DNA of 64,000 nt from positions 186,001 to 250,000 of IMG/VR virus record IMGVR_UViG_3300029893_000001. One strand, 5' to 3'. Below the pieces are notes generated by a model, which searched no databases, had not been told where the DNA came from, and saw only the letters and a list, made by a program, of their open reading frames with translations. Positions within the stretch are counted from its first letter, which is position 1. Each line of letters begins with the position of its first letter. The translations under genes and the position numbers were made by a program. Positions 46,355 to 62,686 of this stretch are shown piece after piece.

Positions 46355-47497
46355 TCACTCCACAAAGCACTTTGTGCTTAGTACCTGAGTAAACCTTACT
46401 TCTACGTCAGAGGTAAGAAATTTTGCAGGACCAGTAGCAGTCAACACTACGGCGTCGCGTAGCCACTGACGCATGTCCTCACCTCTCATCATAGGGTCCT
46501 CTGCATTTCGTCCGGCCTTGATTCTCTGCGCCTCCAACTCAACCGTTTGTTCAGCGTCCACCAAAAAGTTACGGTCCACATTGTGGATCTCATCACGTCC
46601 AGCCGCCATTTTTATGTCTGTGCGGCTGACGCTGATGTTCAATCCGTAAGACGCATTGTCAGGAATGATCCAATTGACATTGCCCTCAACATCAACCTCG
46701 GTAATTGTTTCTTCCAGGCGTACTGTACCGTACACCGTACGGCTCCGGAGCTTTTTTCCAGTAATAGGCGAAGTTGGCTCTGTGCCGTCATTTGCCACAA
46801 CGTGGCCCTCCCGATGATCGATCAACGTGTAGGGAGGTGCTTTACTTGAAAGATGGCGCAGGTATTCTTTCGCAAAAACTTCATCACCGCCGTCTGGCGT
46901 AACACGAATCCACAACTGCTGGGGCTGATCTGTATCAGTGAATCGCTTCACCACACCAAAGCGCATCTCGTTAGAGATCTCTGAGACATTGTTATCCAAT
47001 GTGCGATGAACGATCGTAGGGGCCTTCGTGTTCGCCTCCAAATTCGGTACGTCAAGCGTATTCAAGATCGGACCACCACGTAGCGAAAGAGTGCCGTCTT
47101 GACCGAAATGCGCAGCAGCGAGACCCCTAGAAGTGATATCTATTTCGCTTTCCTGAAGTCGTCGATAGTAAAAACGGTTGTCCTCATACGTAGCTCGGAT
47201 GAAGTTCTCTGCCGCATCTTCAGCCATGTAAGCAGAAGTAAATGTCTCACCCGAATCCGAACGAGAATCCAAGATCATACGCGTGCTACGCTCAGGCATT
47301 ACGCGGATCCAGCTCGCTGGACCTAAATACGGGTGTGTAATTGGAACTGTTCGTCCGGCACGCGGGCCGGTGTAAGTAATCGTATCCGTCGCTGGATTTG
47401 TCGCTGTAGTAACAACACCATAAGGCCGTGTCGCATACTGCAACTCTGTTGCGTACAGGCGACGCCCATCACGAATAAAACGACCCGCCCCACTCAC
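46355..47497 (-). CDS. Baseplate central spike-like protein (gpV/gp5-like)
   Basis: N-terminal OB-type 'GVV...PITHPY...WIRVMPE' region, C-terminal beta-strand repeats; follows the hub gene. Confidence 0.6.
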   Translation of the reverse strand: MSGAGRFIRDGRRLYATELQYATRPYGVVTTATNPATDTITYTGPRAGRTVPITHPYLGPASWIRVMPERSTRMILDSRSDSGETFTSAYMAEDAAENFIRATYEDNRFYYRRLQESEIDITSRGLAAAHFGQDGTLSLRGGPILNTLDVPNLEANTKAPTIVHRTLDNNVSEISNEMRFGVVKRFTDTDQPQQLWIRVTPDGGDEVFAKEYLRHLSSKAPPYTLIDHREGHVVANDGTEPTSPITGKKLRSRTVYGTVRLEETITEVDVEGNVNWIIPDNASYGLNISVSRTDIKMAAGRDEIHNVDRNFLVDAEQTVELEAQRIKAGRNAEDPMMRGEDMRQWLRDAVVLTATGPAKFLTSDVEVRFTQVLSTKCFVE

Positions 47498-50400
47498 GAT
47501 GAACGTCTCCTTGCTGCTTCAGCAGTTTCTCGTGTCAAACGACGACGGTTTGGAAGCGGCTCGCCAGCCTGTCGAGGAATACTACCCTCATACCTTTCAG
47601 GTGGGCACGTATTGGGAGGCACCTCATTCGCAAAGATAGCAACTTGCTGGTTTCTGGAGGTGGTGTAAGCCGCAGCGCGTGCAGCCAAGCGCTCATTTCG
47701 AGCAATGATTGCACTTCGCTCCTGTTCCAGCCTACGGCGTCGTCTATCAGACACCCCGGAGGGGATCTCAGGAACAGGATCTGGAGCGAAGCGTGTGGGC
47801 TCGGCCGCCATCCTCAACGCTGGGATCCCCTTGAGACCAAACTGATCGTAATATTCTTGAAGAGAGATGACGTCAGAATCGGGTCCTGGGCGCCCCACAG
47901 TCTCTGCACGCGAAAAAGGTTCGCTGTTAGGGATGGGGTTGTAGAACAATACGAGGCGTGCGCCCAGCCCCAATGAACCATCACGCATACGTAAAAATCC
48001 TAAGTTGAATCGAGAAACGAGTTCTGGGTCCCAACGGGTCAAGAATTGAGCAAACTCGTCTCCAACACCACAGACCACTCTCATGCTTCCCTGAGTTCTA
48101 GCGCGCTCCGTAGCATCTGCCGCGGGTGTAGTCCCTGCGCGCCGCCGTTCTGCTGCAGTAACCACACGGAACTGTTTTCCTTCTCCAACGTAGCGCTGAA
48201 AAGCCGCTGACCCGAAGATCGCACCCGTTTCAAAGTGCAAATGAGTCTGAGTTTCTCGCTGTTCTGTCCCAGAAAACCCTGTATATGACACGATTTGATT
48301 TCGCTTCACCGTGGCGCCCAGCTCTACACCATCTGCAAGCCTGTTCTGATGCCGATAAAAGGTGACGAAACCATCTGCATGAATAAGACCCAACGACATT
48401 CCCTGACCAGGACGACCATTACGAGCTACCGACGGATGTGTGTAGAAGACAATACCATCGGCAACAGCGTAGCACGGCTCATCCAAATCCATAGGAATGT
48501 CGACACCAGGGTGCCAACCTCCCCCGCGAAGGCCAAAACCTGAGGTAACAATCCTGGGGAATTCGCCGGCAAACTGCCAGGTCCCTACACCACGATCAAT
48601 TTCTTCGTCAGGCAGTTGCCCGCGAGCATATCGATCAAGAATTGACCTACGTTCTCTACCTCCGGGTAGAGATCTCTTCCATGCCGCCCATCTGGGAACA
48701 GTCCTAACCGAGGGCCCCGTCGGAGCACTAAAGAAGCGTGGGTCTCCGGGGGAACACGTTGGTTCTTCGGAAGCCTCAGGGGGGTCGGCCGGCTCGACAT
48801 CATCAGACGGAGTAAGTGTCGACCGTACTCCTGTAACCCCTACACGGGGTCGCGCACCAGCCGGAGTATGAGTAGCCGAGGAGTCAAGTCCTCGCTCCCG
48901 TAGTGTTGCTTCCAGCTCTTCTACACGAGCACGAACTGCGTCCAAACGAGATGCTCGTTCTTCTTCAGTCAACGCGCCAGCGTTGCGAGTCAGTTCATCT
49001 AGCTCAGCCTCAAGCGCTCTGAGTTCTGTGACGACTGAGTCTTCCTCTCCTTCAGGACGCGAGGGAGCCCCCGAAAAAGCGGCGTCAATTACGTTGTACG
49101 TCGCCTGCCCATTTGGAATGATTGCGCGGTAGCGATCTTGAAGGGCCTGAAACTCCTGCTCCGTAAGAGACCTACCGTCGGTTCGGATCGTTCGGATCGC
49201 AGATTCGAAATCTCGCACTCTCTGCTGCAGAGACTGCACAACCGAGCGTCGTGGGTCCGCAGGAATGGCAAAGTACATAGGATGGGCAGGCCCACCTGTG
49301 ATGTAACGAGGAATACCAAGTTCGTCGTATGATCTAGTGTAGTTCAAAGTAATATTCATGGACGGAGGCTGCTGCCCGGCAATTTGCCCCGCCGTGACAG
49401 GAAGTGTCCAAGACAATCCGTCAACCAACGCAATTCTCTCTCTGTAGAGATTAAAAATGGGGCGGTTCAAAGTCAACCAAGGACGAAAAACCACACCAAG
49501 TTGATACCGGTCCGCAGCAGCCAAGAGCTTTTGGAACTCCAAAGTCGCTACCTGCTCCAACCTAGAAACATCTGTGATCTGTGGGTACGTAAGCACCTTG
49601 ACATTTAGTCCCAGACGAGATGCCAAATTTGGCGACCAGATGCCAACAGATCTGTCGGGATTGAGTGGCGTTATCTGTCCCTCATCAATATTCCCAATAC
49701 CAACGAACGAACCGTTTGCAAGGACAGCAGTAACTACCTCACCGCCTTCCTCGTCCATGCTTTCGTTTGTCAGATGATGATCCAGAGTAAGAATCTCAGA
49801 CCATGCTCCGTAATCCTCAGGGGCAAAGTCATACTGAGCGAATTCGAAAATCAGGTCACCACATCCAGAAACCCAGAATCTGTAGTCCGCAGTTTCACAT
49901 GCGTCAGTGAGGAGTTGTAGACGATTGGTCCAGTTAAGGTTGGCTGCAACATTGCCTGCACCGACTACTTCAATCGTCCACAAAAGGTCGTTCGGCGTAT
50001 TACGACCAGGAGACAAGAAATGAACTGCTTGTGCTTCTGGATGCCAAGCGCCTTCACGTCGTGTACTACGACCTGCTTCATGTACCTCTGCCTCTGTCCA
50101 GTATCTGCGGTTGCCGATGGAATGGTCTGGTGGTGCGTCCTCCACCAAAAGCCCCGCCCCTGAAGAAGGAGTGAAGTTATGACGACGAGGAGTACCAAAG
50201 ACACAGAGACTATACCAGTTCTGCATCCGTTGCTGGATCTGTCTGTTGGTGACAGCTCGACTAGCGCCGCGAGCAGCCGAAGGAAAATACGTCTCTAGAG
50301 CATAAGGCCTAGGTGGGTCGCCAAAGAGAGAGCCAAAGAAAGGAAATACACCAGGACGCATTCGACCAATCCGTCCTGCACCGCGGTGAACGGCTACTTC

Positions 50401-51936
50401 CCGTGACGTTCGAGCCGGGTCTACGGTAGACCCCTGCTGGGCGCCCGGCGGCGGCTGGGGAGCCGACGGATCCTCAGCCTCATCCTCTTCGACGGAGGTT
50501 CCTTGAAAGCTGCCCCTAGCGACATTAGCGGCTGCACTAGGTTCGACTCCGTAGCCCCTCAGAACTACCAACAGTTGTCTATACCGAGACCTTTCTGACT
50601 CAGAGAGAGTTGCTTCTCCACCCTCCTGCACTCGGCGGTGAAGAGGCTCAAACTCTGCTGCAGCGGCTCGAAGCTCTTCCTGTGCGGCCGACCTAGCCGT
50701 AGATCTTCCTCGAAACGCCCGATCTGCAGAAGCCTGCAGCAGCGAACCAGAAGTACTAGGCAAAAACGTGAGAGCGGAAATGAGTTCCGGAAGATTCAAA
50801 CTAGACCACGGGTTTGAGAGGCTTGAACCCGCGACCAAATCTGCGAAGAAGCCAGTGTTAAATTGACGATTGCCCTGCTCGGTATACGTCCTAAATACCT
50901 GAATCCCTGAAATAGGGCTCTCGTTTGTTGGGTCGGCTGCTGCAGTTGTCTGTGACCCAGGAAGGACCGCGAACATTGTGTTCGTGTTCACGCGCATCTT
51001 CGACATCAGAAGGCGAATATCAGCGCATGAGACAGAAATCGTGTTCAGGCCGTCAATATAGTTCTCTGTTACTGGCTTAGAAACAATGAATCCGGTGAAG
51101 ACAGGGATCCATTCGTCCAACTCAGACGCAGGGTTATGGATCCAAACGCGCACTGCGTCGTGTTTGTGAAAGACGGTACTCCATAAATGCAGGGGAAATC
51201 TCCGACCTCCTGAATCTGGGTCCACCGGATTGTAGTCCTCACGGCTTTTTCGTGAGTACATGTTGTACTTGACAGTCTCGTCGTAATCGAATGCGTTACC
51301 ACTACCCAGAGGAGAAGCCGTACGGAACTGTCCCTGCAAATTCTCTGGAGTAATAGTGAAACGATGCCCCGCATTGTCGAGCGTGAAGTCACACTTGTTG
51401 TAGTCCGTACCGAATCCATAGGTTACGGAAATCGTGCCGGTCAAAAACGGGGTAACATCCTCACCTTCGATGTATACGACTGCATCGTGATAGAAAACCT
51501 GATGAGGTCTCTCCACGAAGTAGTGCGGAGCGCTCCCACCGCGCACAGTCGGATCTGCCTCGCGTGATGCTGTGAGATCTGCCGAATCGCGTCGGACGTC
51601 ATCACCCTCAGATACGCGCGAAGAACTATCACTACCTACCTCGTCAGGAGAACGACGAGGGTCAGGAGCGCGCCCGTCCGACCCTTCTTCGTTGCCGGAC
51701 GAGTTAATGATCGATGAAGCAAGAGACTGCGCCTGCTCCCTCTCTTGTCGAGGAGTCGTTCCGTCTGCAGTCTGAGTGGTATCTACAACGGAGGGAGGAC
51801 TAAGAACACCATCAACAGGATCGGAGGGTACCTGCTCAATAACCTCAGGAGACCTAATAATGGCTTCGCCAGGTTCCGGGAGAAACCTGGCCTGACCTCC
51901 GCCGATTCTTCGATTGCTATCGCCGCCACCAGGCAT
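47494..51936 (-). CDS. Baseplate hub-like tail protein with M23 peptidase domain
   Basis: N-terminal hub-like 'VYIEGEDVT...F.LDN...VFTGFI'; M23 motifs TSGFG, HPGVD, YAVADG, YRH, HLHFE (~48230-48560). Confidence 0.85.
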   Translation of the reverse strand: MPGGGDSNRRIGGGQARFLPEPGEAIIRSPEVIEQVPSDPVDGVLSPPSVVDTTQTADGTTPRQEREQAQSLASSIINSSGNEEGSDGRAPDPRRSPDEVGSDSSSRVSEGDDVRRDSADLTASREADPTVRGGSAPHYFVERPHQVFYHDAVVYIEGEDVTPFLTGTISVTYGFGTDYNKCDFTLDNAGHRFTITPENLQGQFRTASPLGSGNAFDYDETVKYNMYSRKSREDYNPVDPDSGGRRFPLHLWSTVFHKHDAVRVWIHNPASELDEWIPVFTGFIVSKPVTENYIDGLNTISVSCADIRLLMSKMRVNTNTMFAVLPGSQTTAAADPTNESPISGIQVFRTYTEQGNRQFNTGFFADLVAGSSLSNPWSSLNLPELISALTFLPSTSGSLLQASADRAFRGRSTARSAAQEELRAAAAEFEPLHRRVQEGGEATLSESERSRYRQLLVVLRGYGVEPSAAANVARGSFQGTSVEEDEAEDPSAPQPPPGAQQGSTVDPARTSREVAVHRGAGRIGRMRPGVFPFFGSLFGDPPRPYALETYFPSAARGASRAVTNRQIQQRMQNWYSLCVFGTPRRHNFTPSSGAGLLVEDAPPDHSIGNRRYWTEAEVHEAGRSTRREGAWHPEAQAVHFLSPGRNTPNDLLWTIEVVGAGNVAANLNWTNRLQLLTDACETADYRFWVSGCGDLIFEFAQYDFAPEDYGAWSEILTLDHHLTNESMDEEGGEVVTAVLANGSFVGIGNIDEGQITPLNPDRSVGIWSPNLASRLGLNVKVLTYPQITDVSRLEQVATLEFQKLLAAADRYQLGVVFRPWLTLNRPIFNLYRERIALVDGLSWTLPVTAGQIAGQQPPSMNITLNYTRSYDELGIPRYITGGPAHPMYFAIPADPRRSVVQSLQQRVRDFESAIRTIRTDGRSLTEQEFQALQDRYRAIIPNGQATYNVIDAAFSGAPSRPEGEEDSVVTELRALEAELDELTRNAGALTEEERASRLDAVRARVEELEATLRERGLDSSATHTPAGARPRVGVTGVRSTLTPSDDVEPADPPEASEEPTCSPGDPRFFSAPTGPSVRTVPRWAAWKRSLPGGRERRSILDRYARGQLPDEEIDRGVGTWQFAGEFPRIVTSGFGLRGGGWHPGVDIPMDLDEPCYAVADGIVFYTHPSVARNGRPGQGMSLGLIHADGFVTFYRHQNRLADGVELGATVKRNQIVSYTGFSGTEQRETQTHLHFETGAIFGSAAFQRYVGEGKQFRVVTAAERRRAGTTPAADATERARTQGSMRVVCGVGDEFAQFLTRWDPELVSRFNLGFLRMRDGSLGLGARLVLFYNPIPNSEPFSRAETVGRPGPDSDVISLQEYYDQFGLKGIPALRMAAEPTRFAPDPVPEIPSGVSDRRRRRLEQERSAIIARNERLAARAAAYTTSRNQQVAIFANEVPPNTCPPERYEGSIPRQAGEPLPNRRRLTRETAEAARRRSS

Positions 51937-53804: not shown

Positions 53805-54085
53805 CGCAACACCATGATCTTCATGTTGGGTCTCTGTGGAAAGGCAGGTGCAGCAAGTAGAGGACGCACGCACAGCCACGCATCATTTACCATTCTAAAA
53901 TCCGTCTTCCCACAGCGATCCTTGACAATAGTCTTGAACCAATCGTAGATCTGCTCCACCTTCGTCTCAAAGAAATCGATATCGTATCCACCACCAGCAC
54001 GATTTGCGGGATCCTGATGGGTATCGACCAACAACAAAACGTGAGACTTGTTCAACGCTTCCCAAACAGGCGAAAAATCATCCAT
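53801..54085 (-). CDS. Hypothetical protein
   Basis: Likely start ATG 54085 (MDDFSPVW), GAGG RBS. Confidence 0.55.
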   Translation of the reverse strand: MDDFSPVWEALNKSHVLLLVDTHQDPANRAGGGYDIDFFETKVEQIYDWFKTIVKDRCGKTDFRMVNDAWLCVRPLLAAPAFPQRPNMKIMVLR

Positions 54086-55130
54086 CAGAAGCCTCTGCCA
54101 ATAGCGCAAGCTCAAGCAAAGATGAGATCTCAATCTCGGCTAAAGCCACCTCTTCCTCCGAGGCACCCTGCTGTTTTACACCAGCCAGAAGCTTGTCGCG
54201 AAGAGATCCGTCGACTCCCAACGAGAGCGAGTTGTCCCGAGGAACCAGTGCCACCTTCACTACGTTAGAAGGTAGTTCACTGGGAATATCCTCCTTAGAG
54301 TCGAACTTCCACTTAACGTACGAGTTAGGAGGAAGAGGATCTCCCTTCTTCGCCTCCACGAATCTGTTGGACTCAATAGGTACGAATTGAGGATCTTCAG
54401 GAGTAAGAGTGTCCACTACAAGAACACCCTTAGGCCAGGTATCGCTAAACTTCGTCTGCAGAGGCGAGCCACTATAGAAGGCATTCTTGCTTACCGCCTG
54501 CACCTTGTGAATGTCACCAAGGGCCCAATATGTCACCGGTAGAGCAGAATCCGGCGCATCCACACCATCCTTGAGTCTGTAATAGCTTCCATCTTTCATT
54601 TTGATGTCTGTCTGCGACCCCCGAACCGTCTCATGGGCTACGACCACAAAGTGATCGTGCGGAACCATGATAGATGAGGCCCTAAAACCTTCCACTGCAG
54701 ACCGAACATCCTCCTGGAACCTATGCTTACGATGGCACAAGAGACAAAAGACTGTGTCTCGGACAGAAACATAAGCAGTCTCTTCAGTCACGCACGAATG
54801 CTTGAATTTACCGTGCTTGTACAGCAAAGCCAAATAGTGAATGGCCGTATACCCGGTAGCATCAATCAGATCGTGATTACCAGGGATAACAAATATGTGA
54901 AAACCGGCTGCATCGTACTCCAGCAGTTTACGTTCGACCATCTCCCTCTCGGCCTGAGTAGTCGTTTCTGGGTCATCAAAGATATCCCCAGCAACCACAA
55001 CCGTATCGATGTCGTGGTCGTACGCTACGTCGAAGATGGAGTCAAACATCTCCTCTTGCCGCTTGAGGTAATTAGAAAGATAGCGGTTCGCTCCCACATG
55101 AAGATCTGCTGTATGGACAAACCTCATCAC
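54078..55130 (-). CDS. SbcD/Mre11-like metallophosphoesterase nuclease (gp47-like)
   Basis: HTADLH, AGDIFD, PGNHD, AHE, LGDIH, YSGSP motifs. Confidence 0.9.
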   Translation of the reverse strand: MMRFVHTADLHVGANRYLSNYLKRQEEMFDSIFDVAYDHDIDTVVVAGDIFDDPETTTQAEREMVERKLLEYDAAGFHIFVIPGNHDLIDATGYTAIHYLALLYKHGKFKHSCVTEETAYVSVRDTVFCLLCHRKHRFQEDVRSAVEGFRASSIMVPHDHFVVVAHETVRGSQTDIKMKDGSYYRLKDGVDAPDSALPVTYWALGDIHKVQAVSKNAFYSGSPLQTKFSDTWPKGVLVVDTLTPEDPQFVPIESNRFVEAKKGDPLPPNSYVKWKFDSKEDIPSELPSNVVKVALVPRDNSLSLGVDGSLRDKLLAGVKQQGASEEEVALAEIEISSLLELALLAEASDG

Positions 55131-55771
55131 AACTCCGGCAGAACACCTTCGTGTTTGAGGTAGTTCAGAATAGTTGCAGATGCCTGCTCCCGAGAGAAGA
55201 ATCCTCCGCCCTGTTCTCGATGAACGAGATACCGCTCTCCCGCCCGCTCCCAGAGCCTAATTTGGTCAATGCCAATCTGGTCTGTTGCAATCCTCATCTT
55301 GAAGCGAACCATGACAACTGGATGTCTTTTGCACATCAAGACAAGACCAAACCAACTAGCAACCCCGTCAGCAACCTTAGTTTTGTGGATGTTAAGAACG
55401 ACGAATAAGCTTCTATCCCGCAAAGCCTGAAGAACTCTCTCATACGCAGTTTCATCTATGACCGTGATTCCAATTGTATCCGCAATAAATTTGGCCATAG
55501 GCAGAATGAATCGAGCCTCAGCCGTCTTTACTGGCGGAGGTACCTCCGGATACGCTTCCGGCGTTCTATAAGAGAACTCATACGTATCATCGGGTCCAAT
55601 GATATCAGGATCCGTATTGCCCATCTGAATAGGCTGGTTCGTAACTGGGTCATAAATCCTAGGATCCAGACGAGCCTGAGGGTCTTGGGCCAAACGCCCA
55701 GCCCGGATCAAATCCAAGACAGAGTTCTCCGAACCCGTTGGGGGAGCAGGACGCTCATCGCTTGTACTCAT
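55127..55771 (-). CDS. Hypothetical protein
   Basis: 214 aa, overlapping both neighbours. Confidence 0.65.
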   Translation of the reverse strand: MSTSDERPAPPTGSENSVLDLIRAGRLAQDPQARLDPRIYDPVTNQPIQMGNTDPDIIGPDDTYEFSYRTPEAYPEVPPPVKTAEARFILPMAKFIADTIGITVIDETAYERVLQALRDRSLFVVLNIHKTKVADGVASWFGLVLMCKRHPVVMVRFKMRIATDQIGIDQIRLWERAGERYLVHREQGGGFFSREQASATILNYLKHEGVLPEL

Positions 55772-56292
55772 GAATTCCCCTGAATGTACGTCCTTACGAA
55801 GGATCTCCCAACCTTAGCGGCTGACTTTCGAGTCGTGCAGCGGGTATACTCGTCCTGAGTCTCACGACGCAGGGTAAGACCAGTAAGTCGTGCACCACCG
55901 TTGCCATAACTGGCGTGCAGACTGAACACGCGCTCGCCTCTTACAAAGATCGCGAACGGGATCCAGCGTACCCGCAAGAATCCCCTCTCTCGACGAGTTT
56001 TCACGTCTAAGAAATCAAAGACGCAGTAAGCTCCAAGTGTCAACTGGTTCTCATCTTTAGAGGAGAGGTCATCCAGACACGAAAGAGGAACACCCACCTC
56101 AGACGCCAACTCTGTTGCCAGCGGTTTCACTGACTCTTGGAATCGGAGAGAGTGAATTCTGAATCTGGTCTCCTGAAAATCGATGAGACGACGACCGGTA
56201 TCAATCGATACGATGGGATTTGCTCCCAAAGTCAAAGTTACCGATCGTCGCTGCATCGATTCAGGCTCAACACTGTGAGATGTGGTGGACAT
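55768..56292 (-). CDS. Hypothetical protein
   Basis: 174 aa downstream of recA. Confidence 0.6.
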   Translation of the reverse strand: MSTTSHSVEPESMQRRSVTLTLGANPIVSIDTGRRLIDFQETRFRIHSLRFQESVKPLATELASEVGVPLSCLDDLSSKDENQLTLGAYCVFDFLDVKTRRERGFLRVRWIPFAIFVRGERVFSLHASYGNGGARLTGLTLRRETQDEYTRCTTRKSAAKVGRSFVRTYIQGNS

Positions 56293-56309: not shown

Positions 56310-57650
56310 TCAGTCCCTCAGGATTTCTCCAAGGTCATCCTCATCTGAAACAACTGGCACCTTACGCCGCTTCTTTGGGACTTCCGTCATTTCCGACTCT
56401 AGAGCGACCTTTCCCTTTTTCCGCTTTGGACGAACTTTAGACGCCTCTGGCTCCGCTGGTGTTAGAACTGAGGCAATAGCCTCTAGCTCATTCTCTGCAT
56501 CCTCAGCAGCTTCCTCGTCAAAGTCATATAGAGACTCCCAATTGTTAGCACTGAAAAAGAGCTTGTACGCTAAATCAGATTCCAACTGAGTTCTGCAGGC
56601 AGACCTGAATTCGTTGGTACAGAGAACTCGCATCAAGTCGTCGGTGAAAAAGGCTTGATTATTCCACTCGAAGTCACCGTCTACCTGAAGACGGATCATT
56701 CTCTTGTTACCACTCTTCTCGACTTGACCAGTAAGCTCCAAGTAGCCCAAGCCATCACGGCCTCGCTCGTACCCCCGTCCGAAAGCCACGGTCATAGTTT
56801 CCGTGCACTCCAAGAAGGGAGGGAATTGCTTGTTCTTTTTGGTTGCAATATTGACGTACCTCATCGACCTATTACGTTCGACGAATGGCTGCTTAACGGC
56901 GCTCAAGCGGAATTTCAGATCAGGGTAGAACTTCCATGCCTGACCGCCAGGTTCGTACTCTGGATTACCAAACATCTGCCCAGGATTTAGTCGAGTTTGG
57001 TTTGTGGCGAATAACGACACATTCTTTCTACCCAGTTTCGACTTGACCAGGGGCAAATACATAGAGTGAACGGCAGCAGCCGCCGCCATTCTGACGTTCT
57101 CGTCGTCTTCTTCGATGGCCTCGGGGAGCATCGATGCAACCGAGTCAACAACGAACAAAGCCTGAGGAAGGGGACGCCCGCCCTCATTCGGTGTATAGTT
57201 CGGCAGAGCCCTAAGCAGACGAGCCATGGTTCTATAGGTTTGCTCTGCAGTATCGGGCTGATAGTAATGAAAGTAAGGATTCTTCCTACCGTCAGATAAG
57301 CGCATGCGGACTCCAAGGGCACGGAAGTACTTAGCGTCTGATGCTGTCTCGTGGTCGAAGAAAAATACCGGGATCTTCTGTCTGGTAGCATTGGCAATCA
57401 AATGACCAGCAGCAGTAGACTTACCACTTCCTTCCGGACCATAAGCATTAGTAACTTTCCCTGGTGGGAGCCCGCCCCCGGTCAAAAGATCGAGGATTAG
57501 AGAACCAAACGAAATTGCACCCTCAACATAAGAGCCACGGTCCAGCGAAACAGGTGGATTATCGGTGTCCTTACCAATCGTTTCAGCAAGCGCTGCAAGT
57601 TCATCAATATTTGTAACGTAGTTACGTTCAACGGTCTTCTTTTTTGCCAT
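56310..57650 (-). CDS. recA: RecA/UvsX-like recombinase
   Basis: LDLLTGGGLP.G, GPEGSGKST, DHE, VVDSVA, TNQ.R, PGG.A.KFY, KKNK..PPF; start set at ATG 57650 (AGGA RBS). Confidence 0.95.
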   Translation of the reverse strand: MAKKKTVERNYVTNIDELAALAETIGKDTDNPPVSLDRGSYVEGAISFGSLILDLLTGGGLPPGKVTNAYGPEGSGKSTAAGHLIANATRQKIPVFFFDHETASDAKYFRALGVRMRLSDGRKNPYFHYYQPDTAEQTYRTMARLLRALPNYTPNEGGRPLPQALFVVDSVASMLPEAIEEDDENVRMAAAAAVHSMYLPLVKSKLGRKNVSLFATNQTRLNPGQMFGNPEYEPGGQAWKFYPDLKFRLSAVKQPFVERNRSMRYVNIATKKNKQFPPFLECTETMTVAFGRGYERGRDGLGYLELTGQVEKSGNKRMIRLQVDGDFEWNNQAFFTDDLMRVLCTNEFRSACRTQLESDLAYKLFFSANNWESLYDFDEEAAEDAENELEAIASVLTPAEPEASKVRPKRKKGKVALESEMTEVPKKRRKVPVVSDEDDLGEILRD

Positions 57651-57681
57651 GTGAAGTTCCTGTGGGGGTATTAGTGTGAGT

Positions 57682-57713
57682 GAAGGAGTAAAGGAGTAAA
57701 GGATTGAAGGATG
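57682..57713. repeat. Four tandem 8-bp repeats in the recA leader
   Basis: gaaggagt aaaggagt aaaggatt gaaggatg on the + strand. Confidence 0.85.
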
Positions 57714-57736
57714 GGTCAACAGACCCTAAACTACGA

Positions 57737-59491
57737 CTAAGACTCTTCATCTTCCGAAGAGGGAACGATCCTGCCTTTTTCGTCGAAGACGACAAAGGAT
57801 CGCCAATCTTCACCAGAAGCACTTACATAGGGTCTTCCTGATTCCTTATCAATCAGGACACGAAGCCGGCTTCCAGACTCAGGGGAGCGAAAGGAGGGCC
57901 TCAGGCTCTTTTTGGCCATGAAAACTGCTGTTTCAGTAGCCCACTGCCAAAGGTCGTTGAAGAACTTCTCGAAGGTGAGATCTCCCCGCTCTACGGCAAG
58001 GATTTCTTCTTCAATCTCTGCGCAAAAATCAGGGTCTATTAAATCTGGGGCGGTTCGTCGGACAAAGGTCAGCACCGCCTCTCCCTTTGGAGTTATGCGA
58101 AGAAGGCCTCCTCCCAACGATTCTACGTACGAGTTGTGGTGAAGAAACTCAAGAGCGGGACGGTAGACCCAAGGTCGACCGATAAAGTGGGCATCTAACC
58201 AAGCAACTAACGTACCGTGAGTGTGGCGCTTAGGGGGTTTGGATGTCACTTCGAAAACTGAAGCTTCGACAACTGTGGAATCCGGCTCTAACGGACGAAT
58301 CGTGGGCTCAAACAGCCGCGAGCTAAGCTGATGCCACCCAGGCTCTACGAGCGAAAGACCTTCTGCACGGAAGACCTCTTCATCATCAAGAGCATAAGAA
58401 CAGTTATGCCGCTCAAATTGAGCAGGACGACCCTGAGAACCTAGAGTTCGAAACCAGATAGCCGAATAAATAGACTTCAGGTCTCCTGATAGGTCAAGCT
58501 GAGACGGTGCAAGGGAGATGTGGACTGGACGAATCGCTTCTAGCAACGAGGCAGAAGAAAACGTTGTTGGACTTTTCTCTGCCAGCTCAGCCGCCAACTT
58601 ATGGGTGACATGATCATGGATCCGTCGAGCAGCCTCAGGCGAGAGCCATGTAGAATCGGTGTACGGATAAGTAATTAGTCCCATCTCATACAAAGTGTCA
58701 CACACCCTAACGCAGGTAAGTGCGTCAATCCCATACCTCCAACTAGCAAACTGAATTATGGTGCTAAGAGTAAAGGGAGGTTGAACAGGGGCCAGTTCTC
58801 GTGCAGAGATAAACGCAGGCACTGCTGCTGCAGCTCTGCGCGCGATTTCCTGAGCGCGATTTTCAGACAGCGGTCCTGATTCTGCAGTCGAGCCATCAGA
58901 TAAGAGTGCTCGAACCACGAAGTACGAGTCAGATTTGAATTTTCTAATCTTCCGCTCGACACGAGCAAGCTCAGACAAGAGTGGAATGGCCGTACGATTT
59001 ACTTGTAGGCCCTCACCGAGTCGGGCTGCTAACACCGGAGACAGAGTGAAGTGGACAATCCGATCGGCTGCCTCCCTGGCAAGGTAGCTATTCAACGAAT
59101 TGGTGTTCAATTCTCCCGAGTTTTCTATTGCAGATTTCAAGCTTTCAACGTCCAAAGCCGTCAGTCGAATACGGCGGAACATCTTGTTGGCGTAAGAAGC
59201 AGTGATACTAATCTGATTCGCAATAGCTTCACCTTCGGGTGAAGAATCCGTTGCTGCGTAGACCACGTCAGCACGAGAAACCGCCTTCTTGATTCGTTCG
59301 AACGCCTGGATATTTCGAACCTTCCAAGTGAAGGCCAATGTTTTGGGGTCAATCCCTAATTGTGATTTGGGCAGCCCACAATAGTGTCGGTTACACGACA
59401 CCGCAACCCATCCGTCCAACGACGCTTTTCGGATGAGATCGCTGAAGAATCTCTTCTTCCCCTCAGACTCTACAACGATTAGAGAAGACAT
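57737..59491 (-). CDS. Type IA DNA topoisomerase-like protein with degenerate catalytic motifs
   Basis: LIVVES, ATDSSPEGEAIA, R..ADRIV, PFTLST, LYE.GLITYPYTDS, EAIRP, IGRP, ITPKG; TGATG-coupled to the thioredoxin-like gene. Confidence 0.9.
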   Translation of the reverse strand: MSSLIVVESEGKKRFFSDLIRKASLDGWVAVSCNRHYCGLPKSQLGIDPKTLAFTWKVRNIQAFERIKKAVSRADVVYAATDSSPEGEAIANQISITASYANKMFRRIRLTALDVESLKSAIENSGELNTNSLNSYLAREAADRIVHFTLSPVLAARLGEGLQVNRTAIPLLSELARVERKIRKFKSDSYFVVRALLSDGSTAESGPLSENRAQEIARRAAAAVPAFISARELAPVQPPFTLSTIIQFASWRYGIDALTCVRVCDTLYEMGLITYPYTDSTWLSPEAARRIHDHVTHKLAAELAEKSPTTFSSASLLEAIRPVHISLAPSQLDLSGDLKSIYSAIWFRTLGSQGRPAQFERHNCSYALDDEEVFRAEGLSLVEPGWHQLSSRLFEPTIRPLEPDSTVVEASVFEVTSKPPKRHTHGTLVAWLDAHFIGRPWVYRPALEFLHHNSYVESLGGGLLRITPKGEAVLTFVRRTAPDLIDPDFCAEIEEEILAVERGDLTFEKFFNDLWQWATETAVFMAKKSLRPSFRSPESGSRLRVLIDKESGRPYVSASGEDWRSFVVFDEKGRIVPSSEDEES

Positions 59492-59796
59492 CAAACAAGA
59501 ACCTTGCAAGCAGCGTCAATTACAGCTTCATCAAACAGACCTACAATCTTATGTTGTAGCTTCCCTTTAGCAAAAAGACGTAGTTGAGGTACCCGAACAC
59601 AAGCCAGCTCCTCAGTGGCTTGTGTTCGGGCGGAAACCTCGATAATCACTACCTGAAATCCTGAGGATCTAAGGCGACCCTCAACAGCAAAAAGCATTTG
59701 CCGGGATCTCATGCAAAGCTCATCATCGGGGTCAATGATGAGAACTGCTAGGTTTTCCTTTTGGCGAATTTGACTAAGAATCTGTTCGGCTTGCAT
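59491..59796 (-). CDS. Thioredoxin-fold protein lacking the CxxC motif
   Basis: C-terminal half VRVPQLRLFAKGKLQHKIVG matches Trx 'V.SIPT..F..G.....VG'; active-site position reads DDELC. Confidence 0.75.
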   Translation of the reverse strand: MQAEQILSQIRQKENLAVLIIDPDDELCMRSRQMLFAVEGRLRSSGFQVVIIEVSARTQATEELACVRVPQLRLFAKGKLQHKIVGLFDEAVIDAACKVLV

Positions 59797-59839: not shown

Positions 59840-60928
59840 TCAGAGATCTCCGAAATCGTCATCGAAGTCATCATCGTCCTCTACCGGCGGACGCTTCTTC
59901 TTCTTCGCCTTAGGCGGAGGAGAATCTTCCTCATCATCGTCATCGTCCTCTACCGGCGGACGCTTCTTTTTAGGTGGAAGCGAGTCTTCGTCGTCCTCGT
60001 CATCTACTGGACGCTTCTTCTTCGCCTTCGGCGGCGGAGGAGAATCCTCCTCCTCCTCGTCGTCGTCCTCGAAGTCGTCGTCCTCTACCGGCGCACGCTT
60101 CTTCTTCGCCTTCGGCGGCGGAGGAGAATCCTCCTCCTCGTCGTCCTCGAAGTCGTCATCGTTCACTGGCTTTCTCTTGGAAGGCTTGCCCGCCGAAGGC
60201 TTAGGAGACTCAAAATCATCCTCGTCATCATCTACTGGACGCTTTTTGGAGCCTTTTCTCGGAAGAGACTCTGTTTCCTCGTCATCCGATTTAGTATCGA
60301 AGTAGCCATGCCTCTTGAGGTCTTCACGAATCTTGTGAATGTCGGGCTCTTGATAGAACTCGTCAAACGAGATAAGCTCAAGAGACGTCTCCTCCTCGGA
60401 CAGAGGAGAGCGATCTCCTTTCTGGACCTGCCACTCTACACCGCCACGCTTCTTACTGCGCTGCTTCTGCAGATGGATATCGCACCCAAGCTTTGGGTGC
60501 GCGATGGACTTAGGCTCGCCTTTGACCATGTTCAGCTTCTTGAGGTCAAGGAGCTGTCGCATGACAGTAGGAGGGACATCCAGTGCTCGAATTGGATCCG
60601 CATCGCCACGATTCTGTGCAGTCCGGTCAATGACATTCATCATGTAACGAACACTAGGGCGCAGGCCCACTTCACAAGCAGGGCATCCTCCCTTTTTCGA
60701 AGAGGATTCGCTATCAGGATCCCAGTTCGCGCAGTCTACGGGATAGCGCTTCTTTTCGCCCGTCTTATTGACGAACTCGATCCAATGTTGTGCGTAACTG
60801 AATACGCCGCCCACGATCCGGAAGGGATACCATTCATCCATCTTGGGTAGCTCAGCTACCGAAATGTCTTCCTTCCAGTTTTTGTCGCGGGTACGAGGGT
60901 TTGTATCATCGAAATCTTTGAGTGCCAC
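59840..60928 (-). CDS. Single-stranded DNA-binding protein (gp32-like) with repetitive acidic/basic tail
   Basis: FRIVG...QHW...C...CPAC...YMMNVIDR...GCDI core with Zn ligands; ~150-aa D/E/K/P tail ending DFDDDFGDL. Confidence 0.8.
   Translation of the reverse strand: MALKDFDDTNPRTRDKNWKEDISVAELPKMDEWYPFRIVGGVFSYAQHWIEFVNKTGEKKRYPVDCANWDPDSESSSKKGGCPACEVGLRPSVRYMMNVIDRTAQNRGDADPIRALDVPPTVMRQLLDLKKLNMVKGEPKSIAHPKLGCDIHLQKQRSKKRGGVEWQVQKGDRSPLSEEETSLELISFDEFYQEPDIHKIREDLKRHGYFDTKSDDEETESLPRKGSKKRPVDDDEDDFESPKPSAGKPSKRKPVNDDDFEDDEEEDSPPPPKAKKKRAPVEDDDFEDDDEEEEDSPPPPKAKKKRPVDDEDDEDSLPPKKKRPPVEDDDDDEEDSPPPKAKKKKRPPVEDDDDFDDDFGDL
59843..60290 (-). repeat. Imperfect coding repeats (about 5-6 units) in the SSB tail
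   Basis: Units such as EEEDSPPPPKAKKKRxPVEDDD; nucleotide motifs tcctctaccggcg and cgcttcttcttcgcctt recur. Confidence 0.9.
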
Positions 60929-60992: not shown

Positions 60993-62225
60993 TTAGAGGG
61001 CAGATACCTGCCTAAGTCTTTCTGCCTTGACCTTTTGGGGGTCGAGCTTCTGAGAAACATACTCTGTTAGGCCATAGGCCAAACAGACTAGGTTCCGAAG
61101 GTTGTCAGGGAGCGAGTCAAGAAGGACTTTTACAGAATCAGAAGGATCATAATCAAGTGGGTCTGACTGTTCTTCTTGGGATTCAATGATAGAGGAAATA
61201 GGAGTTGAGGATCCATCTGGTTTGAGGGGGTAGTCGAGAGATCGAACCTGTGACGTCCGAACTGTACTATAGATAGCGTCTACATGGCTTCTCGAATACC
61301 CAGAAACACGAGAAAGTTCTTCAGTAGTCAGAGGACCAGACTGAGATTCTTGCTTTAGTCGAATAGCCTCTAACTTAGCGTAGTGTTGCCAGGTGTTCGA
61401 TGATACCCGGATCAAATTAGAGTCTTCTTTCAGGTAGTACAGCATACTTTGCCGTATCCACCACCGAGCGTGACCCACAAATCTCGCGTTTGAGACTTCG
61501 TCGTAAGACGAAATAGCCCGAAGCAAGCCGAAGCTTCCATTCTGGAAACAGTCGAGCGCGTGGTCCTCCGAAACAGCTTGGGCTTTCGCCTGCTTCAGGA
61601 TTACCCTTGAGTATGCGTTGAATACTCGTTCATAGATCTCTTGAAGTGCAGCTAAGCGTTCAGCAATATAGCGAACGATCCCAAAAGCTGTTCTCGGATC
61701 CAGGCGGCAATCCTGTTCTAAATAATGACACGCGGCATCCGCTGCGGACGCTTCCTCTAAGTCGTCGTTCAAATGAGCCAACAAACTTCGGTGGGAGGCT
61801 TCCTGGTACTGAGAAGCCTTAGAGCACCAGTCCTTCAAGAATTGTTCAAACACCATCCGAGTAAGAGGGAGGGCCAGAACAATATCTAGCTGGCGGTCTT
61901 TATCTCCGTCTAATGTGGCAGCCTGCAAGTCCATGCAAGCGCACAAAAAATCAGCCTCTCGCTGCTCCGGGTCCACCGGGACGTCCTTCACGGACCCATC
62001 GATAAAGGCGATCGATCTTCGATAGATTGCTTTATTGCGGTCTAGGTTGGAAGCTACTTCCGCCCCCAGAGCTATTACACCTAGTTGGATGTAATCATTT
62101 TCTCTCAACAGCAAACGAACGCAATCATAGACAAGCAAAGACGCTCGACTGAACAGGGGAAACAATTCTTCTTGGGTAAGCGTATCCCCTGAGTTGACAG
62201 TCTCGATCAACGTCCGCGCAGTCAT
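60993..62225 (-). CDS. Sigma70-family RNA polymerase sigma factor, region 4 degenerate/truncated
   Basis: Region 2 DCFQNGSFGLLRAISSYD...RFVGHARWWIRQSM; region 3 LIRV...T.EELS...SLDYP; start at the TGATG overlap 62225. Confidence 0.88.
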   Translation of the reverse strand: MTARTLIETVNSGDTLTQEELFPLFSRASLLVYDCVRLLLRENDYIQLGVIALGAEVASNLDRNKAIYRRSIAFIDGSVKDVPVDPEQREADFLCACMDLQAATLDGDKDRQLDIVLALPLTRMVFEQFLKDWCSKASQYQEASHRSLLAHLNDDLEEASAADAACHYLEQDCRLDPRTAFGIVRYIAERLAALQEIYERVFNAYSRVILKQAKAQAVSEDHALDCFQNGSFGLLRAISSYDEVSNARFVGHARWWIRQSMLYYLKEDSNLIRVSSNTWQHYAKLEAIRLKQESQSGPLTTEELSRVSGYSRSHVDAIYSTVRTSQVRSLDYPLKPDGSSTPISSIIESQEEQSDPLDYDPSDSVKVLLDSLPDNLRNLVCLAYGLTEYVSQKLDPQKVKAERLRQVSAL

Positions 62226-62686
62226 CAAGTTAGCTGCCTTAGGCGGTCGTTTATAGACACTCTGGGAGATTGCTGACGCAGTCGCTGCATCTCCGTTGAG
62301 TTCGTTGCAAGCAGAGTCTCGGCTAATTTGAGCAAGTGCGGGCATAGTCCTGGTTTCTGGAACCCCCTGAGTTTTTCAGGGATGTCTTCCGGTCCGACTC
62401 TCATGTCTGTGGCCCCCATAGTGTAGAGAGCAGGGGCACATCGTACCTTGAAGTACGCACAGGAACACGAAACTTTAGCGGACGCAGCCGGATCAATCTC
62501 CTCAGAATAAATCCTGATCACGGACTTACGCGGATCCTTTCCCCCGGAAATTACCGCAAGGAATTGGATAAAGTCCCCCAAGTTATCAGACTCTTTACGG
62601 GTTTTGAGGGCCTCAACCTTGTACTCCGTCTTAAAACGACGGCGGTCCGGCTGAGTAACGACCAAAAGCTGACTCAATGTAAGCAT
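62225..62686 (-). CDS. SWIM-type zinc-finger protein
   Basis: KVSCSCAYF...PGLCPHL; paralog of 14609..15385. Confidence 0.75.
   Translation of the reverse strand: MLTLSQLLVVTQPDRRRFKTEYKVEALKTRKESDNLGDFIQFLAVISGGKDPRKSVIRIYSEEIDPAASAKVSCSCAYFKVRCAPALYTMGATDMRVGPEDIPEKLRGFQKPGLCPHLLKLAETLLATNSTEMQRLRQQSPRVSINDRLRQLT

What the first reader, a model, noticed from the sequence alone, without database searches (positions are those of the whole stretch)
57737..59491. Type IA topoisomerase keeps its catalytic Tyr but has lost partner residues
Seen versus E. coli TopA: Toprim DxDxEGE becomes DSSPEGE (D113 to S); SAGRVQ becomes QVNRTA; YxRTDS becomes YPYTDS (R321 to Y); AHEAIRP becomes LLEAIRP (H365 to L); GRPSTY becomes GRPWVY. 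Equivalents of E9, D111, E115 and Y319 are retained. Known: the Arg two residues after the Tyr and the acidic triad are important for cleavage and religation. Inference: a pseudo-enzyme, or an enzyme with changed chemistry such as cleavage without religation or an RNA substrate.
Basis: partly seen in the sequence, partly recalled or inferred. Interest (0 to 1): 0.75.

Follow-up and report, generated by a model that had tools for sequence, protein, structure and literature searches.

The report
Degenerate topoisomerase IA of huge phages
A 392-kb phage from subsurface metagenomes carries a well-folded, conserved copy of a type IA DNA topoisomerase whose active-site and DNA-groove residues have been replaced across its whole clade (some relatives lack even the catalytic tyrosine), so it is most likely a topoisomerase-shaped protein that no longer passes DNA strands.

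Summary
Window 57737-59491 (-) encodes a 584-aa type IA topoisomerase homologue. It keeps E9, K13, D111, E115 and Y319 (E. coli numbering). It has D113S, R114P, R169E, G194N, Q197A, R321Y, H365L, T496V and R507N. These are not sequencing errors: an independent rock-metagenome assembly gives the same sequence.

The changes are shared by a rare monophyletic family of about 18 sequences from huge phages. The family sits on a long stem inside canonical short TopIAs, and one of its canonical sisters lies in a large-phage contig in the same gene order. All members with enough context lie in one module: SSB, Trx-like, topo-like, RecA/UvsX, two unknowns, SbcD.

In syntenic or family relatives the catalytic Tyr is Gln or Ala, D111 is Leu or Ser, and E115 is Gly or Asn. 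One complete 388-kb relative has lost the gene cleanly. The fold is kept (pLDDT 92.6, TM 0.81 to E. coli TopA), dN/dS is about 0.09, and the core has turned acidic.

Best reading: a non-strand-passing pseudo-topoisomerase kept as an accessory of the recombination module. A cleavage-only, self-trapping enzyme is not excluded for this subclade. It is a new variant of a known kind, supported by computation only.

The parts
57737..59491 (-). Type IA topoisomerase-like gene, 584 aa: four-domain TopA core plus a short Zn-less C-terminal beta domain
   Evidence: ORF. Pfam Topoisom_bac 1.8e-55; Toprim 21.2 bits, below its 23.1 cut-off. AF2 pLDDT 92.6. TM 0.81 to 4rul.
59117..59491 (-). Toprim-like domain D1 (residues 1-125)
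   Evidence: Alignment to E. coli and T. maritima TopA. The Pfam Toprim match is sub-threshold.
59453..59479 (-). IVVESEGKK: the equivalents of E9 and K13 are retained
   Evidence: In 16 full-length family members E9 is E in 15 and D in 1; K13 is K in 15 and R in 1.
59222..59257 (-). AATDSSPEGEAI: degenerate DxDxEGE motif (D111 kept, D113S, R114P, E115 kept, G116 and E117 invariant)
59048..59083 (-). LAREAADRIVHF: R168, D172 and R173 kept; R169 (the -4 cytosine reader) replaced by Glu in 16 of the 18 family sequences; Y177 is Phe
   Evidence: Roles of these residues: PMC3467081.
58982..59014 (-). EGLQVNRTAIP: equivalent of GLSAGRVQS (S192Q, G194N, R195 kept here, Q197A)
58649..58684 (-). MGLITYPYTDST: Tyr275 is the Y319 equivalent (codon TAT); Pro276 is invariant in the family; Tyr277 replaces R321
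58523..58549 (-). SLLEAIRPV: equivalent of AHEAIRP (H365L; E366 and R369 kept here)
58160..58186 (-). FIGRPWVYR: equivalent of GIGRPSTY (R493 kept, S495W, T496V)
58121..58147 (-). FLHHNSYVE: R507 equivalent replaced by Asn
57740..57913 (-). C-terminal tail (residues 527-584): four short beta strands, no Cys, a GRPYV motif. It replaces the Zn-ribbon or Topo_C repeats of cellular TopA.
   Evidence: The family-specific invariant residues W563, F569 and D570 lie here.
59491..59796 (-). Upstream 101-aa thioredoxin-fold protein without CxxC. It is translationally coupled (TGATG) and present upstream in the six family loci compared.
   Evidence: Complex prediction with the topo-like protein gave no answer. 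The gene persists in the relative that lost the topo-like gene.
59840..60928 (-). SSB-like protein with a long acidic / PPPKAKKKR repeat tail
   Evidence: phrog_15004, 1.5e-19; translation.
56310..57650 (-). RecA/UvsX-like recombinase, immediately downstream of the topo-like gene
   Evidence: Pfam RecA 1.6e-31; phrog_97 4.4e-56. Adjacent in every locus that extends far enough; L090 ends inside an unidentified downstream ORF.
55127..56292 (-). Two conserved unknown genes (174 aa and 214 aa) between the RecA-like and SbcD-like genes
   Evidence: Orthologues are present in all compared loci.
54078..55130 (-). SbcD/Mre11-like nuclease
   Evidence: Pfam Metallophos; phrog_100 1.4e-29.
60993..62345 (-). 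Phage sigma-factor-like gene at the upstream edge of the module
   Evidence: Sigma70_r2; phrog_351.

Best explanation
The gene encodes a pseudo-topoisomerase. It descends from an active phage type IA topoisomerase that sat next to the phage's RecA/UvsX-like recombinase. It has kept the padlock-shaped four-domain fold but lost the residue set needed to bind, cleave and reseal a single DNA strand.

Shown:
- Descent from canonical TopIA, with a canonical sister in a large phage in the same gene order.
- Retention of the fold.
- Purifying selection.
- Family-wide replacement of invariant catalytic and DNA-groove residues.
- Loss of the Tyr nucleophile in some family members.
- A shift of the core from basic to acidic.
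- Clean loss of the gene in one complete relative.

Inferred: it no longer relaxes or decatenates DNA. It acts instead as a non-essential structural, protein-binding or weak nucleic-acid-binding accessory of the recombination-dependent replication module (SSB, recombinase, SbcD). DNA topology is left to the phage's own type IIA enzyme and to host enzymes.
For: 1. Canonical residues are replaced. In 109 canonical homologues D113, R114, R169, S192, G194, R195, Q197, Y319, R321, H365, E366, R369 and T496 are 100% invariant, and R507 is 98%. In the family most are replaced and R195, Y319, E366 and R369 are lost only in some members. Of 46 columns that are at least 95% invariant in 141 canonical sequences, only 17 are kept in the family.
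2. The degeneracy is special to this family. 80 of 80 other viral TopIAs keep D111, D113, E115, Y319, R321, H365, R195, Q197 and T496, and 79 of 80 keep E9 and K13; the exception is N-terminally truncated.
3. Orthologues go further. Y319 is Q (codon CAG) in three independent sequences and A in a fourth. D111 is L or S, E115 is G or N, and E9 is D. P0123 and P0122 lie in the same gene order.
4. Within 16 full-length members only 32 of 584 columns are invariant, mostly G, P and aromatic residues. The Tyr nucleophile ranks at the 74th percentile of conservation.
5. The family is monophyletic (SH-aLRT 100) on a stem of 0.97 substitutions per site. It nests (support 99) with canonical short TopIAs. 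One of these, P0129, sits in a TopIA-RecA-SbcD arrangement on a 126-kb contig.
6. The fold and selection are retained: pLDDT 92.6 and pTM 0.88; TM 0.79-0.82 to E. coli TopA; dN/dS 0.09 against 0.075 for recA in the same pair. There are 25 family-specific conserved positions.
7. Core pI is about 6.1 (net charge about -5), against 8.9 (+8.5) in canonical cores.
8. It evolves faster than the neighbouring enzymes: 38-66% identity, against 65-78% for RecA and 56-76% for SbcD.
9. A 388-kb relative judged 100% complete keeps SSB, Trx-like, DUF3467-like and RecA genes but has no topo-like gene anywhere.
10. The genome has its own GyrA-like and GyrB-like genes.
11. Published mutagenesis supports the importance of the lost residues. 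R169A costs 150-fold in relaxation (PMC3467081). R321 stabilises the transition state, R321-to-aromatic mutants need Mg2+ to cleave, D111 and D113 hold the Mg2+, and H365 takes part in the charge relay (PMC6101483).
Against: - The window's own protein still has E9, K13, H33, D111, E115, E117, R168, D172, R173 and Y319.
- In its subclade (P0001-P0007) 13 of 14 such retained positions are invariant, although only 36.5% of all columns are. Some constraint on the old active site therefore persists there.
- All 18 members keep at least one Tyr at position 319 or 321. This pattern is not statistically significant.
- An aromatic residue at 321 is the class of change that still allows Mg-dependent cleavage in E. 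coli TopA.
- No biochemical data exist.
- No partner was identified: complex prediction with the Trx-like neighbour gave no answer.
- The proposed structural role is an inference from gene order only.
Confidence: 0.6

Rival explanations
1. A natural self-trapping or cleavage-biased enzyme. The window's protein still cuts single-stranded DNA through Tyr275 but reseals poorly. It would therefore nick DNA, or attach itself covalently to a 5' phosphate, for example to damage host DNA or to mark or process recombination intermediates.
For: - E9, K13, H33, D111, E115 and Y319 are retained, and they are invariant in the window's subclade.
- Position 321 is aromatic in 16 of 18 members.
- R321W in E. 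coli TopA, R364W in TOP3A and R338W in TOP3B accumulate cleavage complexes (PMC10079683).
- Mutations in the D111/D113/E115 triad block religation and are lethal (PMC7823277).
- An SbcD/Mre11-type nuclease, the kind of enzyme that removes protein-DNA adducts, lies three genes away.
Against: - R321-to-aromatic mutants need Mg2+ for cleavage (PMC6101483), yet the Mg2+ ligand D113 and the charge-relay residue H365 are gone.
- The groove residues that place the scissile phosphate are replaced: R169E, Q197A, G194N, T496V, R507N.
- Four family members lack Tyr319 altogether, and others lack D111 or E115.
- Members without the Tyr still keep E9, K13, H33 and D111, so retention of those residues does not by itself show Tyr catalysis.
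- The core is acidic.
Confidence: 0.2
2. A working topoisomerase with a rebuilt active site. For example, Tyr277 could serve as an alternative or second nucleophile, with a different sequence preference because R169 has become Glu.
For: - Every one of 18 members has a Tyr at position 319 or 321: (Y,Y) in 10, (Q or A,Y) in 4, and (Y,F or M) in 4.
- P320 and T322 are nearly invariant.
- The gene is under strong purifying selection.
Against: - About 0.9 double losses would be expected by chance, so the pattern is not significant.
- No residue replaces the positive charge of R321.
- D111, E115, E9, R195, R369 and R493 each vary within the family.
- 221 canonical enzymes, 80 of them viral, never vary at R321, D113, H365 or Q197.
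- The gene is absent from a complete relative.
Confidence: 0.07
3. A gene in slow decay with no remaining function, simply not yet deleted.
For: It evolves faster than its neighbours. Catalytic constraint is relaxed. One related phage has lost it cleanly.
Against: - Intact ORFs of 572-587 aa are found in at least 16 diverged phages (38-72% identity).
- dN/dS is 0.09.
- There are 32 invariant and 25 family-specific conserved positions.
- The AF2 model is of very high confidence.
- The start is translationally coupled.
Confidence: 0.08
4. A decoy or inhibitor aimed at the host. A dead TopA-like protein would compete with host topoisomerase I for DNA or for partners.
For: Phages are known to target host topoisomerase I (T4 55.2; PMC4396842, listed). 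The protein keeps the TopA shape.
Against: - It lacks the C-terminal domains of cellular TopA.
- It descends from a phage enzyme within a recombination module rather than from a recent host capture.
- Its acidic core argues against strong competition for DNA.
Confidence: 0.05

Closest known systems
Bacterial DNA topoisomerase I (TopA) N-terminal 67-kDa core, E. coli (1ecl, 4rul) and T. maritima (2gai)
   Same: Same four-domain toroidal fold (TM 0.79-0.82). Sequence E-values 1e-38 to 1e-39. Same order of motifs. E9, K13, H33, D111, E115, E117, R168, D172, R173, T318, Y319, T322, D323 and S324 are retained in this protein.
   Different: 24% identity. D113, R114, R169, S192, G194, Q197, R321, H365, T496 and R507 are replaced. 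There are no Zn ribbons. The core is acidic. It scores 196 bits against the NCBIfam topA_bact cut-off of 456, and its Toprim Pfam score is below threshold.
Short canonical TopIAs from metagenomes (P0125, P0129, P0133 and relatives; about 600-660 aa, YHR motif); P0129 is in a large-phage-like contig
   Same: Nearest branch in the tree (support 99). Similar length and no long C-terminal domain. P0129 lies in the same TopIA, RecA, two small genes, SbcD order on a 126-kb contig.
   Different: They keep nearly every catalytic and groove residue, apart from occasional single changes (H33 in P0129, R114 in P0126, S192 in several) and a variable R507, and most have basic cores of pI 8-9.9 (P0125 is 6.8). 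The window's family sits on a stem of 0.97 substitutions per site.
Engineered self-trapping type IA mutants: EcTOP1 R321W and other aromatic substitutions, D111N, TOP3A R364W, TOP3B R338W
   Same: The same Arg, two residues after the Tyr, is replaced by an aromatic residue, and the Toprim DxD motif is damaged.
   Different: Those are single changes in otherwise intact enzymes, and they are toxic. Here many further groove and relay residues are lost, and the Tyr itself is lost in some family members.
Functional coupling of RecA and type IA topoisomerase (E. coli RecA stimulates topoisomerase I)
   Same: A type IA topoisomerase-derived gene sits directly next to the phage RecA/UvsX-like recombinase in every locus that extends far enough. 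RecA-TopA interplay is documented in PMC1761438.
   Different: No interaction was tested here. In this family the topoisomerase partner is probably inactive.

Membership tests
Type IA DNA topoisomerase (fold superfamily) | Four-domain toroidal fold: Toprim D1, with D2-D4 forming the ring | tested here: met
   AF2 pLDDT 92.6, pTM 0.88. Foldseek TM 0.81 to 4rul and 0.79 to 1mw9, E 1e-40 to 1e-42. Pfam Topoisom_bac 189 bits against a cut-off of 35.1.
Type IA DNA topoisomerase (active enzyme) | Catalytic tyrosine (Ec Y319) in the I-T-Y motif | tested here: met
   Tyr275 is present in the window's protein. It is not conserved in the family: Q in P0010, P0011 and L094, and A in P0121.
Type IA DNA topoisomerase (active enzyme) | Invariant Arg two residues after the Tyr (Ec R321) | tested here: not met
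   Tyr277 occupies this position. Across the family it is Y, F or M. It is R in all 109 + 141 + 80 canonical sequences.
Type IA DNA topoisomerase (active enzyme) | Toprim Glu plus the DxDxE acidic triad (E9, D111, D113, E115) | tested here: not met
   E9, D111 and E115 are present and D113 is Ser. In the family D113 is S or G in all members but P0122 (which keeps Asp but has D111L), D111 is L or S in two members, and E115 is D, G or N in others. Pfam Toprim scores 21.2 bits, below the 23.1 cut-off.
Type IA DNA topoisomerase (active enzyme) | Invariant His of the charge relay (Ec H365) in the AHEAIRP motif | tested here: not met
   Leu317 occupies this position. In the family it is mostly L, V or M (G, E, Q or S in the most divergent members).
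Type IA DNA topoisomerase (active enzyme) | ssDNA backbone contacts conserved in all type IA enzymes (E115, R168, D172, S192, R195, Q197; PMC3467081) | tested here: not met
   E115, R168, D172 and R195 are present; S192 is Q and Q197 is A. R195 is lost in several family members.
Bacterial topoisomerase I (TopA equivalog, TIGR01051) | Score over the curated equivalog cut-off | tested here: not met
   196.4 bits against a cut-off of 456.4.
Bacterial topoisomerase I (TopA) | -4 cytosine pocket formed by R169, R173 and Y177 | tested here: not met
   R169 is Glu in 16 of the 18 family sequences. R173 is kept. Y177 is Phe.
Bacterial topoisomerase I (TopA) | C-terminal Zn-ribbon or Topo_C repeat domains that bind the passing strand | tested here: inconclusive
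   There is only a single beta domain of about 58 aa, without Cys, carrying a GRPYV motif. No Pfam hit to zf-C4_Topoisom or Toprim_C_rpt at E <= 0.01.
Type IA DNA topoisomerase (active enzyme) | Relaxation or decatenation through a covalent 5'-phosphotyrosyl intermediate | not testable with these tools
   Needs purified protein.
Pseudoenzyme (operational definition) | Catalytic residues are lost or variable among orthologues, while the fold and the open reading frame stay under purifying selection | tested here: met

The most novel reading that the evidence does not exclude
This would be the first natural type IA topoisomerase lineage converted from a strand-passage enzyme into something else. 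Two forms are possible. One is a catalytically dead padlock-shaped protein that works with a phage RecA/UvsX-like recombinase. The other, in the window's subclade, is a natural suicide topoisomerase that cleaves ssDNA and stays covalently attached, because the Arg next to the Tyr has become aromatic and the Mg2+ site is crippled.
Probability: 0.2. Interest if true: 0.8.

Novelty: new variant of a known kind. Interest (0 to 1): 0.62.

Why it matters
Type IA topoisomerases are found in all cells. Their active-site residues were invariant in the canonical enzymes compared here, about 250 homologues from two searches plus 80 viral ones. The full-text searches run here found no description of a catalytically degenerate type IA lineage.

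A conserved, well-folded, degenerate copy beside a recombinase in huge phages offers three things:
- A natural experiment on which residues the fold needs and which the chemistry needs.
- A possible non-catalytic role for the TopIA padlock in recombination-dependent replication.
- If residual cleavage exists, a natural counterpart of the self-trapping mutants used to study topoisomerase poisons.

It also warns annotators that the label 'DNA topoisomerase I' on such phage genes should not be read as relaxation activity.

Tried and rejected
- **Sequencing error:** rejected. The sequence is identical in contigs of an independent study, and the substitutions are shared by diverged homologues.
- **Recoded stop at the Tyr position in relatives:** rejected. 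The codon is CAG (Gln) in three sequences and GCC (Ala) in one, and the ORFs contain no stops.
- **Partner prediction:** a complex of the topo-like protein with the upstream Trx-like protein gave no answer, so it is not evidence either way. The Trx-like gene persists in the phage that lost the topo-like gene, which weakens the idea of an obligate pair.
- **More family members:** searches added little. The IMG/VR scan with A1 returned only canonical enzymes of at most 27% identity. The second word-index search added one member. The metagenome scan added one partial member. The family is rare, at about 18 sequences.
- **'At least one Tyr at 319 or 321':** the rule holds in 18 of 18 members but is not significant, since about 0.9 double losses are expected.
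- **GenBank phages:** no close relative; the best hit is 27.5% identical. No DNA match was found.
- **Defence systems:** only a weak DpdF match in PADLOC, which was not pursued.
- **Literature:** searches for an inactive or pseudo type IA topoisomerase in phages found nothing relevant. The primary R321 paper (PMC3099684) is not held.
- **dS:** saturated for most pairs, so only one dN/dS estimate is usable.
- **Model coordinates:** not available to scripts, so the geometry of Tyr275 and Tyr277 and the surface clustering of family-specific residues could not be examined.
Full report
**What is there.** The flagged gene is an intact ORF on the minus strand, window 57737-59491, 584 aa. Its ATG overlaps the stop of the upstream gene as TGATG. 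Pfam gives a strong Topoisom_bac match (1.8e-55, residues 134-516). The Toprim match is sub-threshold at 21.2 bits against a cut-off of 23.1. The best solved relatives are T. maritima TopA (2gai, 3.6e-39) and the E. coli TopA 67-kDa fragment. I took E. coli topA from NC_000913 as a numbering reference.

- D113S and R114P, within ATDSSPEGE.
- SAGRVQ becomes QVNRTA.
- R321Y, within ITYPYTDS.
- H365L.
- GRPSTY becomes GRPWVY.

E9, K13, H33, D111, E115, E117 and Y319 are kept. Further losses are R169E, G194N, Q197A, T496V and R507N.

In 109 canonical homologues these positions are 100% invariant, with R507 at 98%. In 80 other viral type IA enzymes from IMG/VR, D111, D113, E115, Y319, R321, H365, R195, Q197 and T496 are invariant, and E9 and K13 are present in 79; the only exception is an N-terminally truncated ORF.

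The sequence is not an assembly or sequencing error. Contigs from several subsurface-metagenome runs match with no differences. A rock metagenome from a separate study also matches with no differences over 58107-59600 and 57600-57928, which covers all the motif codons.

**Where it sits.** The window is part of a 392,328-bp virus record that CheckV rates 100% complete. All 26 ORFs of at least 250 aa in the window are on the minus strand. They include a baseplate wedge protein, a 1480-aa M23-peptidase protein and a large helicase.

The topo-like gene lies in a replication and recombination module with this order:
- sigma-factor-like gene
- SSB-like gene
- 101-aa thioredoxin-fold gene without CxxC
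- the topo-like gene
- RecA/UvsX-like gene
- two unknown genes
- SbcD-like gene

The genome has no second type IA gene. It does encode GyrA-like and GyrB-like type IIA subunits just outside the window.

**It is a family, not a one-off.** The protein database shows a sharp break. Ten homologues are 46-72% identical and 580-587 aa long. After them identity drops to about 29% with ordinary TopA. An exhaustive profile search added more divergent members (P0121, P0122, P0123, P0130). Further scans added P0268 and a partial sequence, L094. That makes about 18 sequences, all metagenomic, on contigs of up to 424 kb.

Gene order around them is conserved even at 38-46% identity: primase, RNR, sigma, SSB, Trx-like, topo-like, sometimes a DUF3467-like gene, RecA, a 163-aa gene, a gene of about 215 aa, SbcD, and further on a giant M23 protein.

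A maximum-likelihood tree places the family as one clade (SH-aLRT 100) on a long stem of 0.97 substitutions per site. It nests (support 99) with short but fully canonical TopIAs. One of these, P0129, sits on a 126-kb contig in the order TopIA, methyltransferase, small gene, RecA, two small genes, SbcD, clamp loader. The family therefore most likely descends from an active phage topoisomerase already located beside the recombinase.

**What changed and what did not.** The substitutions are family-wide:

| E. coli position | State in the family |
|---|---|
| D113 | S or G (D retained only in P0122) |
| R114 | mostly P (M, F or D in four members) |
| R169 | E in 16 of the 18 family sequences |
| Q197 | A, S, G, P or T |
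| M320 | P, invariant |
| R321 | Y in 12 of 16, otherwise F or M |
| H365 | mostly L, V or M (G, E, Q or S in the most divergent members) |
| R507 | mostly N (also Q, A, V or E) |

More telling, family members lose residues that the window's copy still has:
- Y319 is Gln (CAG) in P0010, P0011 and L094, which are three independent sequences with synonymous differences around the codon. It is Ala (GCC) in P0121.
- D111 is Leu in P0122, which lies in a complete 424-kb genome with terminal repeats, and Ser in P0130.
- E115 is Gly in P0123, which is in full synteny, and Asn in L094.
- E9 is Asp in P0123.

Of 46 columns that are at least 95% invariant in 141 canonical proteins, 17 are kept in the family and 29 are lost or partly lost. 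Among 16 full-length members only 32 of 584 columns are invariant, and these are mostly Gly, Pro and aromatic residues. The nucleophile ranks at the 74th percentile of conservation and E9 and K13 at the 88th. The catalytic positions thus behave like ordinary, moderately conserved sites.

The core has also shifted from basic to mildly acidic. Canonical cores have a median pI of 8.9 and net charge +8.5, and most of the nearest canonical relatives have pI 8-9.9. The family has pI about 6.1 and net charge about -5.

**It is not a decaying gene.**
- All members are intact ORFs of 572-587 aa.
- The AF2 model is very confident (pLDDT 92.6, pTM 0.88).
- The model superposes on E. coli TopA with TM 0.79-0.82, including a small C-terminal beta domain.
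- The one pair with unsaturated dS gives dN/dS 0.09, against 0.075 for recA.
- 25 positions are conserved in the family but differ from canonical enzymes.

It does evolve faster than its enzymatic neighbours. Identity to the window's copy is 66/45/46/38%, against 78/66/65/74% for RecA and 76/59/56/68% for SbcD.

One related phage of 388,485 bp (CheckV 100%, RecA 65% identical) keeps the SSB, Trx-like, DUF3467-like and RecA genes. It has no topo-like gene at that site or anywhere else, whether searched with the Pfam model or the family profile. The gene is therefore useful but dispensable.

**How it most likely works.** Published work assigns the lost residues these roles:
- R321 stabilises the phosphorane transition state (PMC6101483).
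- R321-to-aromatic mutants can still cleave, but only with Mg2+ (PMC6101483). The R321W mutant reseals poorly (PMC10079683).
- D111 and D113 hold the Mg2+.
- H365 and D111 relay a proton to E9.
- R169, R173 and Y177 position the strand through the -4 cytosine, and R169A costs 150-fold in relaxation (PMC3467081).
- E115, R168, D172, S192, R195 and Q197 hold the backbone.

The window's protein lacks R321. It also lacks D113 and H365, the two things that could compensate for the missing Arg. Half of the strand-positioning residues are gone as well. Together with the loss of the Tyr in some family members, the best-supported reading is a pseudo-topoisomerase. The padlock fold is kept, strand passage is lost, and the protein is retained as an accessory of the recombinase, SSB and nuclease module.

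The descent, fold retention, selection, residue losses, charge shift and dispensability are shown. The loss of activity and the accessory role are inferred. I could not identify a partner: the complex prediction with the Trx-like neighbour returned no answer.

**The main rival.** The rival is a cleavage-biased, self-trapping enzyme. In its favour:
- The window's subclade (P0001-P0007) keeps 13 of 14 of the surviving catalytic and groove residues invariant, although only 36.5% of columns are invariant there.
- Position 321 is almost always aromatic.
- The equivalent mutants (EcTOP1 R321W, TOP3A R364W, TOP3B R338W, D111N) accumulate covalent complexes.

Against it:
- The Mg2+ and relay residues that such mutants rely on are missing.
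- Members without the Tyr keep E9, K13, H33 and D111 all the same. Retention of those residues is therefore not evidence of Tyr chemistry.

A rebuilt active site with Tyr277 as nucleophile is suggested only by the rule that at least one Tyr is present at 319 or 321. That rule holds in 18 of 18 members but is not significant.

**Comparison with what is known.** By fold and descent this is a type IA topoisomerase. It is not a TopA equivalog: it scores 196 bits against the cut-off of 456. It fails the defining active-site tests for R321, D113, H365 and Q197.

No GenBank phage carries a close relative; the best is 27.5% identical. Full-text searches found no description of an inactive type IA topoisomerase lineage. 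I therefore class it as a new variant of a known kind. It is interesting mainly as a possible first natural non-catalytic type IA topoisomerase, and as a caution for annotation.

Noticed in passing
window 59840-60928 (-): The SSB-like protein (phrog_15004) has a C-terminal half made of alternating poly-acidic runs and repeated 'SPPPPKAKKKR(P)' units. These resemble eukaryotic nuclear-localisation signals, which is unusual for a phage SSB tail.
   Followed up: no
window 59491-59796 (-): A 101-aa thioredoxin-fold protein lacks the CxxC motif and has a single Cys in DELC. It is translationally coupled to the topo-like gene and conserved upstream of it in the six family loci compared. It is still present in the relative that lost the topo-like gene.
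   Followed up: partly
G001 (record of L120), L120:6203-6974: A 388-kb related phage rated 100% complete has Trx-like and DUF3467-like genes between the SSB and RecA genes but no type IA topo-like gene anywhere. This is a clean loss.
   Followed up: yes
L084:11747-12088, L092:4113-4451, L090:2325-2678: A 112-117-aa DUF3467-like gene ending in a conserved ...P(P)xxIH sequence lies between the topo-like gene and the next downstream gene (RecA-like where identified) in several relatives. It is absent from the window, from P0010 and from P0011.
   Followed up: partly
genome G000:C1:178210-179511 and 182392-182865 (just upstream of the window): The phage encodes its own GyrA-like (758-aa ORF) and GyrB-like (625-aa ORF) type IIA topoisomerase subunits.
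   Followed up: partly
L082:5950-8613 and L117:6550-8913: Inteins appear to interrupt module genes in relatives. An 887-aa gene with Intein_splicing and LAGLIDADG hits lies where the sigma-factor-like gene lies in other relatives. A 787-aa RecA with LAGLIDADG_2 occurs in the canonical-TopIA phage.
   Followed up: no
window 1-64000: All 26 ORFs of at least 250 aa are on the minus strand. No tRNA gene was found in the window.
   Followed up: no
window 47494-51936 (-): A 1480-aa protein carries an M23 peptidase or endolysin-like domain near residues 1130-1237. It is conserved downstream of the module in all relatives at 1469-1535 aa.
   Followed up: no
window 55127-56292 (-): Two conserved genes of unknown function (174 aa and 214 aa) always lie between the RecA-like and SbcD-like genes. 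They have no Pfam or PHROG match.
   Followed up: no
window 57737-59491 (-), residues 44-197: There is a weak PADLOC match to DpdF (2.1e-07, 26.9 bits) over the Toprim and domain IV region. It probably reflects a shared Toprim-type region rather than a defence role.
   Followed up: no
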